DNA from: Wallemia ichthyophaga EXF-994
Lineage: Eukaryota > Fungi > Basidiomycota
Length of the DNA stretch: 32,000 nt
NCBI RefSeq assembly: GCF_000400465.1
Contig: NW_008806282.1
Span: forward strand, 1-32,000
Direction: 5' to 3'
Both the position numbers and the translations under genes were made by a program. This document shows, one piece after another, positions 2,722-24,908 of this stretch. Numbering within the stretch: the stretch's first letter is position 1; each line of letters opens with the position of its first letter. The notes beneath the pieces are model-generated. The model was not told the DNA's origin. It saw nothing but the letters and a program-made list of their open reading frames with translations, and did no database searches.

Positions 2722-3350
2722 ATGCCACGTAACTCACGCTCTTCTGGTGGTAGTAGACCTTCCGCCTCATCCTCTGCACCAAGAAGCTCTCCATTCGGCT
2801 CTCAGCAAACCAGATCCGCCAGCACAGCAGCTCCAGCATACGGTGCACAACGTTCGAGTGGGTGGTTATTGCTCAACCACGTGCATTATCTCACATGCCC
2901 TAGATTACGCTCAACAGCAATCACACCCACAGCCTCAACAACAAGCTCAGCCAGCAGCAGCTCCTAGTGCCGGTGGCTCAATGATGGGCAATATCGCTTC
3001 AACTGCTGCCGGTGTAAGTTGCCGCAGCTCTTCTCATGAAAATCCACTGATTAGTAATCTGTTTTTAGGTTGCCGCCGGACATGGTCTGTCTAATATGCT
3101 TTTCGGCGGTTCTTCCAGCCAGCCAGCTCCTGTTGAGCAGCAAGCCCAGCCTCAACAACAGCCACAGCAACAGCAGCAACCACCTGTGTGTGAGACTCAA
3201 GCCAAGGACTTTGTTACTTGCTTGAACGCCACAGGCGACGTAAACAGCTGCTCTACGCTGTTAGACTTACTCAAGGTGAGAATTCTGGCTAATTAATTAC
3301 CTTTCTAATCTGTCAAATAGTCTTGTCAAGCAGCTGCGGCACCTTATTAG
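2722..3350 (+). CDS. MIX17: Mitochondrial intermembrane-space CHCH protein, Mix17/CHCHD2/CHCHD10 family; 4 exons
   Basis: MPRNSRSSGGSRP... presequence-like N-terminus; hydrophobic GSMMGNIASTAAGVAAGHGLSNMLFGG segment across an intron; twin CX9C (CETQAKDFVTC...CSTLLDLLK|SC); ends SCQAAAAPY-TAG at 3350. Confidence 0.9.
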
Positions 3351-6744: not shown

Positions 6745-10504
<3,760 letters not shown>

Positions 10505-18675: not shown

Positions 18676-20319
18676 ATGGCTTCAACTTCGCAAACGTAGG
18701 CGACAGGAGATATCGAATACAGCGCACAAAGCTCACCCAAAAACCAGTGCAGAATCTGAATGGAAGAATCAATTAAGAGTGCCGCAAAAAGATTTACGTC
18801 CACAAACTGAAGTGAGCAGCCAATCAGAGAGATATATTCGTTGGCTGACAAAAGCACAACAAGGATGTCACAAAAACGAAGGGAGGTGAATGGGAGGATT
18901 TTGGATTAAGGAGGGAGCTGCTTATGGGTATATTTGAAGCCGGTGTGAGTCGACTCGGTTCACAATGAGCTGCATTTCTCACGATGAAATTTAAAGTTTG
19001 AAAAGCCATCACCAATTCAAGAAGAAGCGATTCCATCTGCTATTGCAGGCAGGGATATTTTAGCAAGGGCTAAGAATGGTACAGGTAAAACTGCATCATT
19101 CGTTATTCCAAGTTTAGAGAAAATCAACGTACAGAAACCAAAGATACAAGCTTTGCTCTTGGTTCCAACTAGAGAATTGGCTTTACAAACTTCCCAGGTT
19201 TGCAAATCACTCGGTAAACATTTAGGTATACAGGTTATGGTCACAACAGGTGGTACAACGTTAAGGGATGATATTATGAGATTATCAGACCCAGTTCATA
19301 TTCTAGTTGGTACTCCTGGTAGAATATTGGATTTGGCTGGTAAAGGCGTTGCAAATCTCAATGAATGTCCAACATTCGTTATGGACGAAGCAGATAAACT
19401 TTTATCTCCAGAGTTCACACCAGTTATGGAACAGTTGCTATCACACCTTCCTTCTTCTAGACAAGTTATGCTCTTCTCTGCAACCTTCCCACTAATTGTG
19501 AAGGACTTTAAAGAGAAGCATATGAAAGACCCACATGAAATCAATCTTATGGATGAATTGACACTCAGAGGTATCACTCAGTATTACGCTTTCGTCGATG
19601 AAAGGCAGAAAGTTCACTGCTTGAATACACTCTTTTCAAAATTACAAATCAATCAATCAATTATATTTTGTAATTCAACTAATAGAGTTGAATTACTTGC
19701 AAAGAAAGTTACAGAGCTTGGCTACTCTTGCTTCTTTTCTCATGCAAAAATGTTACAAAGTCATAGAAACAGAGTTTTCCATGATTTCAGATCAGGTGTT
19801 TGTCGTAATTTAGTTTGCTCAGATTTACTGACAAGAGGTATCGATATTCAAGCTGTCAACGTTGTCATAAACTTTGATTTCCCTAAAAACAGTGAAACGT
19901 ATTTACACAGAATTGGTAGATCTGGTCGTTACGGTCATTTGGGTTTGGCTATCAATTTAATCACTTATGAGGATAGATTTAACTTATACAAGATTGAACA
20001 GGAATTGGGTACTGAGATTCAACCAATTCCTTCACAAATTGATAGATCGTTATACGTTGCACCAAACGCTAGTGATGACGATGGTCAAATTCAGCAATCT
20101 CAACAACAACAAAAGGGTTTACCTACTTTACCACCAACTCAACAAGTCATGAACGCTTATTCACAACCACCACCTCAACCAACATTCAATCAATCGAATC
20201 AAAATCACCAGTATCAACAACGTAGTAATCGTGGTGGATACAATAGTGGATATTATGGAGGATCTGGTTTTCGTGGCAGAGGTGGTGGACCACCACGTGG
20301 AGGAGTTCCTAGAGCTTAG
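18676..20319 (+). CDS. DHH1: DEAD-box RNA helicase Dhh1/DDX6; 4 exons
   Basis: [14 protein letters not shown]|DVTKTKG...FEAG|[10 protein letters not shown]; [29 protein letters not shown]; Q/N-rich and RGG tail. Confidence 0.97.
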
Positions 20320-21048
20320 AACTTTCATTTTACAGTTAATCAGTTTATCTTTCCTTTATCTTTTCCTTATGTGAAATAGTTTACTCTTTCATTTCCTCCT
20401 CATTTCTTACGTTTCAATTCACTTTATTGCTTATACTACTTGAAGCACTCAAATCGTAGTATAATCGATGGCTCACTACTTGACAAATATTATTGCCATT
20501 TCCTCAAATCCACAATTCCTCAGTGTTGAATTAGTTTCTACCTTAAACTAAACACTAAATTAAGCACTTAACCAACCATCAAACCTTGAATAAATCTAAG
20601 AAGCTTAAACGCAAAGAGTACATTATTAAGACGTTCAACTTTCCACCTCACCTCATTCCATTTACAAGCCGTCAGGACGGGATACTTTACACTTTCACAG
20701 AATATTCTGAATTATCGTTAAGTTTAGATATCCTCAATAACTTAGGTGATGTGTTCAACAGACATCATGCGCATATCCAACACACCTCTACCTACACTCT
20801 GTAAACGACTAACAAACTAACAAAAGGCCTTCCGTATACACACAATCAGCCGAGAAAAGTTTTTTTTTGTTCAATTTGATTTTGTAAGTTAAATGCACAA
20901 ATCACATTGAAATAATGCGTTATGCTGGAAGTATTGGGGAATTATCAATATAATATCAAGTATACAATGAGAAGTAACTGAAGTGACTGTGAACTTGTTA
21001 GAAAATCGTATGTACTGTGTTATAAGACAACTAATACAGCTGATACGT

Positions 21049-21137
21049 GATCAGACGTTTAAGATATATTATCAGCATAGAGACGGTTCAAGTGAACCAA
21101 GTCAGAAAGCCATGCATATGAATCTTAATCATCATCT
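21049..21137 (-). ncRNA. Box C/D snoRNA B (predicted 18S C49 2'-O-methylation guide, yeast numbering)
   Basis: C AUGAUGA (21135-21129), D' CUGA (21105-21102), GGUUC/GAACC hairpin, C' AUGCUGA (21078-21072), D CUGA (21054-21051). Guide AUAUGCAUGGCUU pairs 13 nt (one G-U) with 18S AAGCCAUGCAUGU. Flanking arms UUAUAAG...AGCUAUAC and GUAUCAGCU...CUUAUAA form an external stem. Confidence 0.8.
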
Positions 21138-21228
21138 TGTATAGCTAGTAGCAATTACTTATAATCTATACTCACCTAGAGCTAATTGTCAGTGTATTCA
21201 ATTATGATGAGACCATGGCAAGACAGAG

Positions 21229-21315
21229 AATCAGTCTATCATTTAAGGACAGCAGTCCATCCACATAAGCCATGGAAAGGCGTTGGATAATACATGCGTT
21301 TAAAGCATCATTTTG
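21229..21315 (-). ncRNA. Box C/D snoRNA A (SNORD45/U45-like 5' guide; predicted target is the 18S U equivalent to human Um172)
   Basis: C box AUGAUGC (21311-21305) and D box CUGA (21234-21231). Guide GCAUGUAUUA (21297-21288) is complementary to conserved 18S UAAUACAUGC, followed by U and a degenerate D' (CCAA). Flanking intron arms GAGAGGCUGUGGCAG and UUGCCAUGGUCUC can pair as an external stem. Confidence 0.65.
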
Positions 21316-21585
21316 ACACGCTGCCACAGCCTCTCAAGTAATTCTACTCACAACGTAGTGGTTCAGGTTGAAGAGTTGAGGAATAAAATTTGGAAATCTC
21401 ATTTAAATAATAAAAAACATAAATTTATTACATCATTTGATTTTAATCACAATACTTGTTTCAAGAGGTAATTCTGCTTACTTGATGACTTTGTACTTTA
21501 GCTATTTGATTGAGTTATTTGGAGTTATACCTTAAAATTGAACTTGAGTTGGGGAAAAAGAACTACAGCATTTGAATTGAACCGC

Positions 21586-22952
21586 TTAGTCTGCTTTGTT
21601 TTGAGTGTAATCCTATTCAATACCATCATCAGACACCGAGAAAACCAACTTAAAACAAACTAACCTCCATCTCAGCGTCCAAGTCTTCAGCTGATTTGGC
21701 AACTCTCTTCTCTTGCTTTGGCTGATCGCTGCGCTTTTTGGTTGGTTTCCTAGTGAAACCGTGTTAATTGATCTGCTCCAACGACTGCCGGTATAATTGG
21801 ATTTATTAAAGAATTGAACATTAATGACAACCCCAACGTATCCAAATATAACAGTGCAACAACGTGAAAGACGAAACTCACTTGATAGCCTTCTTGGTCT
21901 TTGGCTTAACAGTGGTGACTGCCTCAGCAGGCTTTGGAGCTAATCTTTGAATTAATCCGCTCTTATCTGATGATTCAACGACTATTTCAATCTTGATTGG
22001 TCTGTCTGTTGATTTTATATTGAAGAAAAAGCGCTCGTCAGTCATTTTGTTCTAAATCAATGCAAGCACACATTATTTAGATAGTGTGGGGTGTGTTTTT
22101 CCCAGCAATGCATTGTAGACTCTAGCTGACTAACTGAAGCTTGAATCCCTTTCAACTAAGCTACTCAAAGTGGGCGTGATTAGGGTCATTGGCGAAGTAT
22201 CAAATGGGTTTGTCTCAACTGCCTATCCAATTGAGCTGACTGTCAGCCAATACCTGTCGCGCGTGATACTGAAGATCAAGTCGGTTAGCTAGACATTTGC
22301 GAGCTGAGTGTGGGATGATTCCGTCACTATACGCGTCACTCTGAGTCGCGTCGCGTCGCTCCAACCAGTCTAAGCGTCAGCGAGTCTGCTCAGTATGAGC
22401 TTATGACGAGTAATGCTAGAAACATGCTCAGTCATTGCAAGTATCGTACATACTCACACAACTATCTAAATAATGTGTACTATGAAAAGGTAAGACTAAC
22501 TGTTGTCAATGACGCGACCATTAAACTCCTTAAAAGCCTTGTTGCCATCACCTTTTCTCTTAAATCTAACTTGACCAAAGCCCTTCGAGGTTCCTCTTTG
22601 GTCGTAGCTGATGCTGCACTCAGCTACTGGTCCCACAGTTTCAGTCATCAATTCCTAAAGCGGTGTGAGTAACAAATATAAGTTATTGAATCTTGCTCAC
22701 CTTAAGCGCGTGGTCATTAACGTCTGGTGGGAGGTTGGAGATGATGATCTTCTTAGCCTCCTCATTGAGTGCAGCACCATCCTTGGTCCTTGGAATGACA
22801 CGATCAGCAACAGGCTTAGCGCCTTGAGCCATACGCTTCGATTCACCCTGTTTAGCGCCGCTGAGACGCTTGCGCTGAGTGGTTTTGCGATGGCTTTTGC
22901 GTTCTTGACGCTTAGCCTTAATAACGTCTTCGAGTGGCTGGTCAATGTTCAT
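21586..22952 (-). CDS. YRA1: mRNA export adaptor Yra1/ALYREF (THO complex subunit 4); 5 exons
   Basis: N-terminal UBM MNIDQPLEDVIK; RRM KIIISNLPPDVNDHALK|ELM...RGTSKGFGQVRF...FNGRVIDN|RPIKIE; C-terminal UBM KSAEDLDAEME|DY. Introns 22700-22655, 22500-22006, 21881-21750, 21664-21613; TAA at 21588-21586. Confidence 0.9.
22068..22478. repeat. 18-bp perfect inverted repeat bracketing YRA1 intron 2
   Basis: ACACATTATTTAGATAGT (22068-22085) is the exact reverse complement of ACTATCTAAATAATGTGT (22461-22478). Confidence 0.95.
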
Positions 22953-23512: not shown

Positions 23513-24908
23513 TTACGCAAATAAATGATGTGGCGCCGATGGCACTGTCTTTTGCTCCCTAGACTGTGTCGTTGAAATATCCGCAAGTAATGATCCTCCC
23601 TTGCCTTTACGCTTACCACGCCTCATCACTCCTCGTCTAGTAAACGAAAGTCCTTTGAATCTATAATGCTGTATTTATTCGTTAGTTGATGTATTTCCAA
23701 CTTTATTATCCCTTCTCACCTTCTTGTTCATATAGTAAAACAACACGCAATCTTGTACCGTTTTTCCAGGGATTTTTTCGGCTATCTCCGCGAATGATTT
23801 GGGTGTATCGACGTATGCTTTTAAGAAAACCTCCTTTTCCTCCTCACTCCAGGCTAGTGATTCGTAACTACGCTCATAATACCTTGTTGGGTCAAATATC
23901 CGCGCATTAGCGTCATTGTATGAGCAAGCCCATCTATCAATTGAAGTGACTTCTTGATTGGGTATATTAGCTTGAGTTCTGACTGCTCTGATCTTTGGAT
24001 CTCTCTTGTTCACTGTTTGTAGTCTTTGCAACATCTGATTCAAAAATTTTTCATTCTCCATTTCCTCCATATCGTTTTCATTGACGAGATGCATTGGCTC
24101 AGCATCTTGTGTCGCTTTCTCTATTATCGAACTTGAATCTGTTGCTTCCATGTCGGTGGATTCAACCGGTGGTGTTGCTTCTGCAACTACATGTTGAGGT
24201 ACAGCCGAAACAGGCTTACGGGACATATTTGCATTACGTCTATTTGTTAATTCAACATGCTCAACAGCTTCACCTCTTCTAGAACGCTTCTTCATTATAT
24301 GCTGTTGTTCTGCCTTTACTTTTACACCTCTCTCACAACTAGCTTCCCAATCAACTTGTAATGCTGCGTAATCATCGTTCAATCCCTCAATCTTTTGACT
24401 TCTGGCCTGATTTCTAAATATCATATACTCTCTCACCTTATCCTTGATTTGATCGTGCTGTTGCAAGACTTGAGATGTAAGCGAGTGAAACGTTTCAAGA
24501 TTACTATCTGTGTACTGTAATTCAAGCATTTCAACTGGCCTATCATTGACTTGCTCATTATTGAATTCCAAAGTCGGGTCTGGTGGATCGAATGATATCC
24601 CCTTGAGCTGCCTATCTTTCACCGTGTAGTTGACGAGTTGATCCAGATCATATAAAGGTGTTCCATCCGGTGCATCGGCTTCTACTCGTGCGCTTTGCCT
24701 CAATCCTGACACTGTGTGTGGATTTAACAGCGTCGGGTTTCGCATCATGATCGTCTTGTCTGAAGTTGCAATCGACGAGCAGGATTGGTACAATTGAAAA
24801 ATGAAAATTATATTTCGTGTTCGTAGCATAGTGTCCGGTAAGAAATGGTATTGACACACGCCATCTACCCCGTAATCTAATTACCGTGGGGCTAGACGGT
24901 AATGGCAT
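23513..24908 (-). CDS. SANT/Myb-domain protein, Snt1/NCoR-like (HDAC complex subunit); 5' end uncertain
   Basis: SANT domain WSEEEKEVFLKAYVDTPKSFAEIAEKIPGKTVQDCVLFYYMNKK; after an intron HYRFKGL...RKGKGGSLLADI; upstream coiled coil; stop at 23515-23513. Confidence 0.75.

What the first reader, a model, noticed from the sequence alone, without database searches (positions are those of the whole stretch)
20987..21351. Unannotated snoRNA host gene with two intronic C/D snoRNAs targeting the 5' domain of 18S rRNA
Seen: the largest gene-free gap in the window (1.27 kb between DHH1 and YRA1) holds two minus-strand introns about four times the normal length. Each has a C...D module of 81-85 nt enclosed by complementary intron arms. 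Established: fungal C/D snoRNAs are often carried in introns of non-coding hosts, and external intronic stems aid their processing. Inference, from remembered rRNA sequence: B guides methylation of 18S C49 (13-nt duplex, D'+5 rule), a site I do not recall from the S. cerevisiae map. A resembles the human SNORD45 Um172 guide, also absent from budding yeast as far as I recall. The D-box guide of B (UAAUAUAUCUUAAACGU) has no target I recognise and may be an orphan guide.
Basis: partly seen in the sequence, partly recalled or inferred. Interest (0 to 1): 0.8.

Follow-up and report, generated by a model that had tools for sequence, protein, structure and literature searches.

The report
Two intronic snoRNAs in Wallemia
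The gap between DHH1 and YRA1 in this Wallemia ichthyophaga window holds two back-to-back introns, each carrying a conserved box C/D snoRNA that pairs with the 5' part of 18S rRNA; it is real and unannotated, but both guides and the abutting-intron layout are already known from other fungi.

Summary
On the minus strand, intron 1 (21351-21176, 176 nt) and intron 2 (21175-20987, 189 nt) each enclose a C...D module (81 and 85 nt) flanked by long complementary arms. The window is Wallemia ichthyophaga. The same two modules sit between YRA1 and DHH1 in four other Wallemia lineages. The snoRNA bodies are 83-84% identical and the splice signals 93-100%, against 25-49% for the intron flanks.

SnoRNA B pairs over 13 bp with 18S A46-U58 and points to C49. 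This is the same predicted duplex and site as Neurospora crassa Nc CD4. SnoRNA A pairs over 13 bp with 18S 166-178 in a W. sebi-complex 18S. That is the segment targeted by human U45, plant snoR122 and N. crassa Nc CD32. Its D' box is degenerate (CCAA), so the modified base is U169 or A170.

The D-box guides of both snoRNAs have no target above chance, and B's varies between species at the critical positions.

This is a recursive-splice layout already described in Candida, Debaryomyces and S. pombe snoRNA hosts.

No RNA-level data could be obtained. Whether the host has its own promoter or is YRA1 read-through is unresolved. Verdict: new member of a known kind.

The parts
21407..21440 (-). Conserved block TCAAATGATGTAATAAATTTATGTTTTTTATTAT, with AATAAA at 21429-21424. 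It is either the YRA1 poly(A) signal, a TATA-like promoter element of the snoRNA host, or both.
   Evidence: Nearly invariant in four lineages while the surroundings diverge (alignment A2). Its function is inferred from sequence only.
21352..21400 (-). Exon 1 of the host transcript. The 3' end at 21352 is defined by the splice site. The 5' end is unknown, and 21400 is only a guess. Pyrimidine-rich, with no conserved ORF.
   Evidence: The segment 21440-21352, which includes exon 1, shows 50% mean pairwise identity. The 29-codon ORF starting at the ATG near 21401 is absent in L001 (read directly from alignment A1).
21176..21351 (-). Intron 1 (176 nt): 5' splice site GTGAGTA, branch-point motif ACTGAC 21193-21188, 3' splice site TAG 21178-21176.
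   Evidence: The 5' splice site is 100% conserved and the branch point 93% across five lineages.
21320..21344 (-). 5' arm of the external stem of intron 1.
   Evidence: 21-bp duplex with 21222-21199, z = -3.3. W. hederae has a 34-bp equivalent built from different sequence.
21229..21315 (-). snoRNA A, box C/D. C box UGAUGC 21310-21305. Guide AACGCAUGUAUUA 21300-21288. D'-like CCAA 21286-21283. Small covarying hairpin 21281-21279 with 21271-21269. Invariant hairpin GGAC/GUCC 21258-21255 with 21250-21247. D box CUGA 21234-21231. The ends of the mature RNA are estimated.
   Evidence: 83% identity in five lineages. 13 Watson-Crick bp to 18S 166-178 of a W. sebi-complex 18S. Hairpin covariation GC/UA and CG/UA.
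21199..21222 (-). 3' arm of the external stem of intron 1.
21170..21178 (-). Junction TAG|GTGAGT: the 3' splice site of intron 1 directly followed by the 5' splice site of intron 2. This is a zero-length exon, a putative recursive splice site.
   Evidence: 96% identity across five lineages. W. mellicola has TAG-T-GTGAGT.
20987..21175 (-). Intron 2 (189 nt): 5' splice site GTGAGTA, branch-point motif CTAAC 21001-20997, 3' splice site CAG 20989-20987.
21138..21165 (-). 5' arm of the external stem of intron 2.
   Evidence: 24-bp duplex with 21047-21019, z = -4.0, 0 of 500 shuffles as low.
21049..21137 (-). snoRNA B, box C/D. C box AUGAUGA 21135-21129. D' guide AUAUGCAUGGCUU 21119-21107, whose 5th nucleotide before D' is G21110, opposite 18S C49. 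D' CUGA 21105-21102. Hairpin GGUUC/GAACC 21098-21094 with 21089-21085. C'-like UGCUGA 21077-21072. Orphan D guide 21071-21055. D box CUGA 21054-21051.
   Evidence: 84% identity in five lineages. 13-bp duplex (12 Watson-Crick plus 1 G-U) with 18S A46-U58 on real Wallemia and Lentinula 18S. Same predicted site as Nc CD4.
21019..21047 (-). 3' arm of the external stem of intron 2.
20900..20986 (-). Start of the last exon of the host. Its 3' end is unknown, and 20900 is arbitrary. Poorly conserved.
   Evidence: 33% mean pairwise identity over 20986-20940; alignment A5.

Best explanation
A short RNA polymerase II transcript on the minus strand, just downstream of YRA1, serves as a snoRNA host. It carries two directly abutting spliceosomal introns, each holding one box C/D snoRNA.

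Proposed processing (inferred): the introns are removed one after the other. Removing either one leaves or recreates the splice site the other needs at the TAG|GTGAGT junction. This yields two separate lariats. Each lariat is debranched and trimmed by exonucleases down to the snoRNP core assembled on the C/D kink-turn. The long complementary intron arms bring the C and D boxes together, standing in for the weak terminal stems.

Proposed function (inferred): mature snoRNA B (about 85-90 nt) uses its D' guide to direct fibrillarin to 2'-O-methylate 18S C49. Mature snoRNA A (about 81-87 nt) pairs with 18S 166-178 and methylates U169 (human U172) if CCAA acts as its D' box, or A170 if the box is read one base earlier. 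The D-box guides of both appear to have no conserved rRNA target.

Shown here: the sequence anatomy, conservation across five lineages, the arm duplexes, and complementarity to real 18S sequences. Inferred: expression, the order of splicing, snoRNP assembly, and the methylations themselves.
For: - Anatomy and coordinates.
- Organism: the SANT-domain ORF at 23678-24859 is 99% identical to a W. ichthyophaga protein.
- Synteny: orthologous loci lying between YRA1 and DHH1 were found in L001, W. hederae, W. mellicola and L010.
- Conservation by segment: snoA 83%, snoB 84%, first 5' splice site 100%, first branch point 93%, junction 96%, intron flanks 25-49%, last exon 33%.
- External arms are significant and are built from different sequences in different species.
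- The internal hairpin of A covaries.
- A real W. sebi-complex 18S was recovered as L014.
- On L014, B's D' guide pairs over 13 bp at guide positions 2-14, placing C49 opposite position 5. A's guide gives 13 Watson-Crick bp. Both are the best hits across the partial 5' ETS, 18S, ITS1 and 5.8S, and both sites recur in Lentinula 18S.
- Shuffled guides reach these scores in only 7 of 300 (B) and 4 of 300 (A) trials.
- N. crassa Nc CD4 is an 81-nt intronic snoRNA, cloned and seen on a Northern blot, predicted to guide 18S-Cm49 through a 13/0 D' duplex. Nc CD32 is predicted to guide 18S-Um167, with homologs listed as snoR122 and U45A/B (PMC2780460).
- Zero-length and one-base exons between snoRNA introns, removed by recursive splicing, are documented in the Candida parapsilosis group and D. 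hansenii (PMC5033589) and in S. pombe SPNCRNA.445 (bioRxiv 10.1101/226894).
Against: - There is no RNA-level evidence for small RNAs, splice junctions, lariats or methylation.
- No Rfam family reaches its gathering score anywhere in the window. In E-value mode only a chance-level match overlaps B.
- A has a non-consensus C box (UGAUGC, or UGAUGU in W. hederae), a degenerate D' box (CCAA) and no clear C' box. The spacing between its conserved 3' half and the D box varies between species.
- The 18S tested is from a congener of the W. sebi complex, not from W. ichthyophaga itself.
- L014 was assigned to Wallemia through three qPCR oligonucleotides recalled from memory, although all three match exactly within 75 nt.
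- L010 lacks an arm duplex around B.
- The guide shuffle test gives p of about 0.01-0.02 per guide, which is significant but not overwhelming on its own.
Confidence: 0.82

Rival explanations
1. The host is not an independent non-coding gene. The two introns lie in an extended 3' UTR or read-through form of the YRA1 transcript, so snoRNA output is coupled to YRA1 transcription. The spliced product would probably be degraded, for example by nonsense-mediated decay. The snoRNAs and their targets are as in the best explanation.
For: - The first 5' splice site is on the same strand as YRA1 and only 234 nt after its stop codon (21588-21586).
- The conserved block at 21440-21407 reads like a poly(A) signal: UGUA, AAUAAA, then a U-rich tract. 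That leaves only about 55 nt for a separate promoter and first exon.
Against: - The same block is A/T-rich and could act as a TATA-like element.
- It is followed by a pyrimidine-rich stretch, as at the starts of known snoRNA host genes.
- A strong conserved poly(A) signal upstream would terminate most YRA1 transcripts before the introns.
- Nothing here can decide between the two.
Confidence: 0.3
2. There is one 365-nt intron (21351-20987) holding both snoRNAs. The internal TAG/GTGAGT and first branch point are not used, and the two snoRNAs are separated by endonuclease cleavage, as in plant intronic snoRNA clusters.
For: The outer splice sites alone would suffice to remove the whole segment. 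Intronic snoRNA clusters exist in rice and Drosophila, as cited in PMC2780460.
Against: The internal branch point (93%), TAG and GTGAGT (96%) are conserved in five lineages while the neighbouring bases are 25-49% identical. The same junction type is shown experimentally to be used in S. pombe and Candida snoRNA hosts.
Confidence: 0.08
3. SnoRNA A is a genuine C/D-box RNA but not a methylation guide. It pairs with 18S 166-178 as a folding or processing chaperone, or is otherwise an orphan. Its conserved 3' half (UGUGGAYGGACUGCU(U)GUCCUUAAAYGA) would then carry a different function.
For: - The D' box is degenerate (CCAA) and there is no recognisable C' box.
- The 3' half is invariant, yet its distance to the D box changes by one or two bases between species.
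- That half has no rRNA complement above chance.
Against: Degenerate D' boxes are common in eukaryotic snoRNAs (established knowledge). Nc CD22 in the N. crassa supplement is drawn with a CCAA D' box. The same 18S segment is a known methylation target in human, plant and N. crassa.
Confidence: 0.15
4. The conserved blocks are not snoRNAs. They are cis-acting elements of the convergent YRA1 and DHH1 3' ends, such as terminators or 3' UTR structures.
For: The region lies between two convergent genes. A further conserved block of unknown nature lies at 20665-20790.
Against: Each block has C and D boxes in the correct order and spacing, and sits inside a complete intron with conserved splice signals. 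Each carries an invariant 13-nt complement to 18S at the canonical distance from a D' position.
Confidence: 0.03

Closest known systems
Neurospora crassa Nc CD4 (box C/D snoRNA, predicted guide for 18S-Cm49; Liu et al. 2009, PMC2780460)
   Same: For snoRNA B: intronic, 81 against 85 nt, a D' guide with the same 13-bp duplex on 18S A46-U58, and the same predicted site C49. The order of elements also matches: C box, guide, D', short hairpin, C'-like UGYUGA, a 3' guide without an assigned target, D box.
   Different: Outside the boxes and the guide, sequence similarity is no better than in cross-controls, so common descent cannot be shown. Position 13 of the duplex is a G-U pair in Wallemia and Watson-Crick in N. 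crassa. The phylum differs (Basidiomycota against Ascomycota). The supplement text garbles some box letters.
Human SNORD45A/B (U45), Arabidopsis snoR122 and N. crassa Nc CD32 (guides for 18S-Um172 in human, Um167 in N. crassa)
   Same: For snoRNA A: a guide directly after the C box that pairs with GCUAAUACAUGC of 18S. It is intron-encoded and of similar size (Nc CD32 is 82 nt).
   Different: A has CCAA where these have a CUGA D' box. It lacks the second guide (Am161/A166 or A159) of Nc CD32 and U45. Its complementarity extends 3' of the core (GCGUU in Wallemia 18S). There is no Rfam match to any family. The register allows either U169 or A170.
Recursive splicing at zero-length or one-base exons in fungal snoRNA host genes: the snR57-55-61 and snR41-70 clusters of the Candida parapsilosis group and D. 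hansenii, and S. pombe SPNCRNA.445
   Same: A 3' splice site directly abuts a 5' splice site (TAG|GTGAGT), with one snoRNA per intron in a non-coding polycistronic host. A one-base exon variant occurs in a related species. The junction is conserved between species.
   Different: Here the evidence is sequence and conservation only; use of the junction is not shown. The lineage is Wallemiomycetes (Basidiomycota), and the snoRNAs carried are different.
Vertebrate and fungal non-coding snoRNA host genes (UHG, GAS5; N. crassa clusters I-V)
   Same: Short, poorly conserved exons without a conserved ORF, and conserved introns that carry the functional products.
   Different: The transcript start is not defined. 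It may instead be a read-through extension of the protein-coding YRA1 gene.

Membership tests
Box C/D snoRNA | C box (RUGAUGA) near the 5' end and D box (CUGA) near the 3' end | tested here: met
   B has AUGAUGA and CUGA, invariant except that L010 has GUGAUGA. A has (A/G)UGAUG(C/U) and CUGA; the last C-box base deviates but the UGAUG core is invariant.
Box C/D snoRNA | A terminal or external stem that brings the C and D boxes together | tested here: met
   Arm duplexes of 8-34 bp abut the boxes in 9 of 10 cases. They are built from different sequences and are significant against shuffles in most cases.
Box C/D snoRNA | A guide of at least 10 bp complementary to rRNA ending next to a D or D' box, with the target opposite the 5th nucleotide | tested here: met
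   B's D' guide gives 13 bp at positions 2-14, pointing to C49. A gives 13 bp at positions 2-14 if CCAA is the D' box. The D-box guides do not meet this criterion.
Box C/D snoRNA | Internal C' and D' boxes | tested here: inconclusive
   B has D' CUGA and C'-like UGCUGA (ACUGA in L010). A has only a degenerate CCAA and no clear C' box.
Box C/D snoRNA | Accumulates as a stable 70-120-nt RNA bound by fibrillarin, Nop56, Nop58 and Snu13 | not testable with these tools
   No expression data could be reached.
Nc CD4-type 18S-Cm49 guide family | A D' guide forming the A46-U58 duplex that places C49 at the 5th position | tested here: met
   compared with Table 1 and Additional file 1 of PMC2780460.
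Nc CD4-type 18S-Cm49 guide family | Sequence homology beyond the boxes and the guide | tested here: inconclusive
   The global alignment of B with Nc CD4 (57 of 88 identical) is about the same as the control alignment of B with Nc CD32 (55 of 92).
Nc CD4-type 18S-Cm49 guide family | 2'-O-methylation at 18S C49 | not testable with these tools
   The site is only predicted in N. crassa as well. The primer-extension mapping described in the passages read covers CD11 and CD29.
U45 / snoR122 / Nc CD32 (18S-Um172 guides) | A guide complementary to 18S UAAUACAUGC next to a D' box | tested here: inconclusive
   The complementarity is met (13 bp). The D' box is CCAA, and the register gives U169 or A170.
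U45 / snoR122 / Nc CD32 (18S-Um172 guides) | A second guide for the neighbouring A159/A166 (N. crassa A161) | tested here: not met
   No complement to GGUAAUUCUAGAGC exists in A. The D-side region has no rRNA target above chance.
U45 / snoR122 / Nc CD32 (18S-Um172 guides) | A match to an Rfam covariance model | tested here: not met
   No family reaches its gathering score. No match overlaps A even at E-values up to 10.
Recursive splice site (zero-length exon) in a snoRNA host | A 3' splice site AG immediately followed by a consensus 5' splice site, with an upstream branch point | tested here: met
   ACTGAC, then 9 nt, then TAG|GTGAGTA. Conserved in five lineages, with one extra base in W. mellicola.
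Recursive splice site (zero-length exon) in a snoRNA host | Stepwise removal demonstrated by intermediates or two lariats | not testable with these tools
   No RNA data.
Non-coding snoRNA host gene (UHG/GAS5-like) | Its own transcription start, and exons without a conserved ORF | tested here: inconclusive
   The exons are poorly conserved (33-50%) and the only short ORF is not conserved. The start is unknown, and YRA1 read-through is not excluded.

The most novel reading that the evidence does not exclude
The two snoRNA introns belong to an extended YRA1 transcript rather than to a separate host gene. Production of two 18S-modifying snoRNAs would then be coupled to read-through past the poly(A) site of the mRNA-export adaptor gene. 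That gene also carries a 495-nt intron with near-invariant blocks, which may be autoregulatory. In the same reading, snoRNA A's invariant 3' half and snoRNA B's species-variable D guide act on targets outside mature rRNA, such as spacers or other RNAs. This would make the locus a regulatory link between mRNA export and ribosome biogenesis.
Probability: 0.08. Interest if true: 0.6.

Novelty: new member of a known kind. Interest (0 to 1): 0.3.

Why it matters
- It adds two snoRNA genes and a host locus to Wallemia genomes. No gene is called at this site in the NCBI assemblies examined. The one published homology survey reported that W. sebi appeared to have lost many snoRNAs (PMC5824354), so divergence rather than loss may explain part of that gap.
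- It places an 18S-C49 guide, so far described only from N. crassa, in an early-branching basidiomycete lineage. This suggests the guide is either old in Dikarya or arose twice.
- It extends the abutting-intron (recursive splice) layout of snoRNA hosts from Ascomycota to Basidiomycota. This supports the idea that the 'one snoRNA per lariat' constraint shapes these genes.

None of this changes current understanding of snoRNA biology.

Tried and rejected
- Rfam at gathering thresholds on the whole window gave nothing. In E-value mode on 20300-22100 only chance-level matches appeared, the one overlapping B being plasmodium_snoR20 at E = 6.
- I tested whether B's D guide targets the 18S region equivalent to human Um116. 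A metagenome scan for that pattern found nothing, and the real Wallemia 18S has no such sequence. Rejected.
- I tested whether B's D guide pairs with the invariant UUAAGAU after its own C box. The variable positions do not covary with it (read from alignment A4). Rejected.
- A 10-12-bp match of several guide pieces to GCGUUUAAGG in the W. sebi-type 5' ETS, 461 nt before 18S, fits the W. ichthyophaga guide but not the W. mellicola one. I treat it as chance.
- A 12-bp match of L001's A 3' region to the 18S 3' end (UUGGUCAUUUAG) is not kept in register in other species. Treated as chance.
- I tried to obtain Wallemia 25S through spurious ORFs in rDNA. The protein search returned only other fungi. 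The Gloeophyllum contig held only part of the 18S. Lentinula rDNA (L017, L018) was used for 25S and 5S instead.
- A viral-contig scan for 18S returned one chimeric contig with about 80 nt of 18S.
- L002 and L003 are plant and fish DDX6 genes, and L015 is a random match. All are irrelevant.
Full report
**What is there.** On the minus strand, GTGAGTA at 21351 opens an intron. Its branch-point motif is ACTGAC (21193-21188) and its 3' splice site is TAG (21178-21176). The next base, 21175, starts a second GTGAGTA, which opens a second intron with CTAAC (21001-20997) and CAG (20989-20987). The introns are 176 and 189 nt, and there is no exon between them.

Intron 1 holds a module with C box UGAUGC (21310-21305) and D box CUGA (21234-21231), 81 nt in all. 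Intron 2 holds one with AUGAUGA (21135-21129), D' CUGA (21105-21102), a C'-like UGCUGA (21077-21072) and D CUGA (21054-21051), 85 nt in all.

The DHH1 ORF ends at 20319. The true YRA1 stop codon is 21588-21586, after a C-terminal SAEDLDAEMEDY motif.

**Organism and relatives.** The SANT-domain ORF at 23678-24859 is 99% identical to a Wallemia ichthyophaga protein. Through that protein and the DHH1 exon I fetched syntenic loci from four other lineages:
- L001, an unnamed Wallemia from a Logan assembly
- W. hederae (L005)
- four W. mellicola strains (L006-L009)
- L010, another unnamed Wallemia

Every one carries both modules between YRA1 and DHH1.

**Conservation.** Mean pairwise identity over five lineages (alignment A2):

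| Segment | Identity |
|---|---|
| snoRNA A | 83% |
| snoRNA B | 84% |
| First 5' splice site | 100% |
| First branch point | 93% |
| TAG\|GTGAGT junction | 96% |
| Intron flanks | 25-49% |
| Last exon | 33% |
| 21440-21352 (exon 1 and upstream) | 50% |

This is the signature of intron-encoded functional RNAs in a host whose exons do not matter.

**Complementary arms.** RNAduplex between the 5' and 3' intron flanks gives the following:
- Around A in the window: 21 bp (z = -3.3; 2 of 500 shuffles as low).
- Around B in the window: 24 bp (z = -4.0; 0 of 500).
- In W. hederae: 34 bp and 27 bp, made of different sequences.

Nine of ten species-by-intron combinations have such a duplex abutting the boxes. 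L010's B does not. Pairing, not sequence, is what has been kept.

Inside A, a small hairpin between the D' position and the 3' half covaries: GC/UA and CG/UA, with 100% of cells paired. With five sequences this is only modest support.

**Targets: getting a real 18S.** I needed real rRNA sequences. One metagenome scan testing a specific idea for B's D guide found nothing. A second scan used a W. sebi qPCR primer recalled from memory and returned L014. L014 contains that primer, the matching probe and the reverse primer exactly, all within 75 nt. Rfam finds a complete 18S and a 5.8S on it. I take L014 to be W. sebi-complex rDNA.

**Targets: the D' guides.** On L014:
- B's D' guide forms 13 bp (12 Watson-Crick plus 1 G-U) with 18S A46-U58, at guide positions 2-14, putting C49 opposite position 5.
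- A's guide forms 13 Watson-Crick bp with 18S 166-178 (UAAUACAUGCGUU).

Both are the best matches across the partial 5' ETS, 18S, ITS1 and 5.8S. The same sites are found in Lentinula 18S, where A's duplex is 10 bp. Shuffled guides reach these scores in 7 of 300 and 4 of 300 trials. Both guide stretches are invariant in all five lineages.

**Targets: the D guides.** The D-box guides score at or below chance against Wallemia 18S and 5.8S and Lentinula 25S and 5S. B's D guide reads UAUAUCU-NNN-ACGU|CUGA. The three variable bases fall at positions 5-7, exactly where a methylation guide cannot vary unless its target does. In A, the distance between the invariant 3' half and the D box changes between species. 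I therefore call both D guides orphans. Two caveats apply: the organism's own 25S and its full spacers were not available.

**Which base A modifies.** The bases after the guide, UCCAA, are invariant, and what follows them varies. If CCAA is the D' box, the target is U169, equivalent to human U172. If the box is read one base earlier, the target is A170. The printed N. crassa Nc CD32 sequence does not settle this.

**Comparison with what is known.**
- N. crassa Nc CD4 is an 81-nt intronic snoRNA, cloned and seen on a Northern blot. Its D' guide is predicted to direct 18S-Cm49 through a 13/0 duplex. No homolog is listed in S. pombe, S. cerevisiae, Arabidopsis or human (PMC2780460). Its sequence shows the same guide and the same order of elements as B.
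- Nc CD32 is predicted to guide 18S-Um167, with snoR122 and U45A/B listed as homologs.
- Sequence similarity outside boxes and guides is no better than in cross-controls. I therefore claim functional equivalence, not proven homology.
- Zero-length and one-base exons between snoRNA introns, removed by recursive or nested splicing, are described for the Candida parapsilosis group and D. hansenii (PMC5033589).
- A zero-length exon was shown by spliceosome profiling in the S. pombe snoRNA61 host (bioRxiv 10.1101/226894).
- The only paper in the library that mentions both Wallemia and snoRNAs is the fungal survey that reported apparent snoRNA loss in W. sebi.

**How it most likely works.** Each intron is excised as its own lariat. 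The arms juxtapose the C and D boxes so that the core proteins can assemble. Debranching and exonucleolytic trimming then release one snoRNA per lariat. The abutting junction lets two snoRNAs share a minimal host while keeping the one-snoRNA-per-intron rule. These steps follow from established knowledge of intronic snoRNA processing and were not shown here.

**What remains open.**
- *Where the host starts.* A conserved block at 21440-21407 (UGUA, AAUAAA, U-rich) lies 146-179 nt after the YRA1 stop and 55-90 nt before the first 5' splice site. It could be the YRA1 poly(A) signal, a TATA-like promoter, or both.
- *Expression, splicing and methylation.* These could not be tested.

**Verdict.** This is a real, well-supported pair of intron-encoded box C/D snoRNAs. 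No gene is called at this site in the Wallemia assemblies examined. Their guides and gene layout each have published precedents in other fungi, so this is a new member of a known kind. Interest 0.3.

Noticed in passing
window 20665-20790 (either strand): A second strongly conserved block lies between the snoRNA host introns and the DHH1 stop, in four Wallemia lineages. On the minus strand it has invariant AAAGTATCCCGTCCTGACGG, AGGATATCT, TGTTGGATATGC and a hairpin GATGT-CTGTTGAAC-ACATC. On the plus strand it forms a conserved stem GGGATACT/AGATATCC and ends in ...ATCCAACA, after which conservation stops. It could be an H/ACA-like RNA, a DHH1 3' UTR element, or part of the host's last exon. It has no Rfam match and no covariation.
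   Followed up: partly
window 22500-22006 (minus strand): YRA1 contains a 495-nt intron, about ten times the usual length. In four lineages it has near-invariant blocks: the first ~60 nt including GTTAGT and a second GTGAGTAT, then TTGGATAGGCAGTTGA, TTCGCCAATGACC, and about 50 nt around the branch point. This recalls the long autoregulatory intron of S. cerevisiae YRA1 (that comparison is from memory).
   Followed up: partly
L005 7796-9204; L006-L009 about 7752-8315: The gene calls for W. hederae and W. mellicola truncate YRA1 inside its long intron. In W. hederae the C-terminal exons are called as a separate 74-residue gene. The true C-terminus carries the SAEDLDAEMEDY motif.
   Followed up: partly
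window about 23006-22955 (minus strand): The YRA1 start may be ATG immediately followed by a GTGAGC intron of about 47 nt, with a second in-frame ATG (MNIDQ...) in the next exon. Which start is used is unclear.
   Followed up: no
L014 (JGI Ga0207869_1005096), 18S 166-182: This W. sebi-complex 18S reads UAAUACAUGCGUUAAAA where Lentinula has UAAUACAUGCAUUCAAG. SnoRNA A's guide matches the Wallemia-specific GCGUU extension, giving 13 bp against 10 bp. The guide thus fits the lineage's own rRNA.
   Followed up: yes
L014 5' ETS, about 461 nt before 18S: GCGUUUAAGG is complementary, over 10-12 bp with G-U pairs, to three pieces: the UUAAACG-containing part of A's guide, A's CCUUAAAUG, and W. ichthyophaga's version of B's D guide. 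It is not complementary to W. mellicola's version. Probably chance.
   Followed up: partly
L011 (IMGVR_UViG_3300007534_000105) 3265-3343: A contig in the viral collection ends in about 80 nt of eukaryotic 18S 5' sequence joined to unrelated GC-rich sequence. It is probably an assembly chimera.
   Followed up: no
L004 (ENA metagenome scaffold) and P0127: An ENA metagenome holds a more distant Wallemia-like relative: its DHH1 exon is 90% identical and its SANT protein 53% identical. Its contigs end before the snoRNA region, so it could not be used.
   Followed up: no
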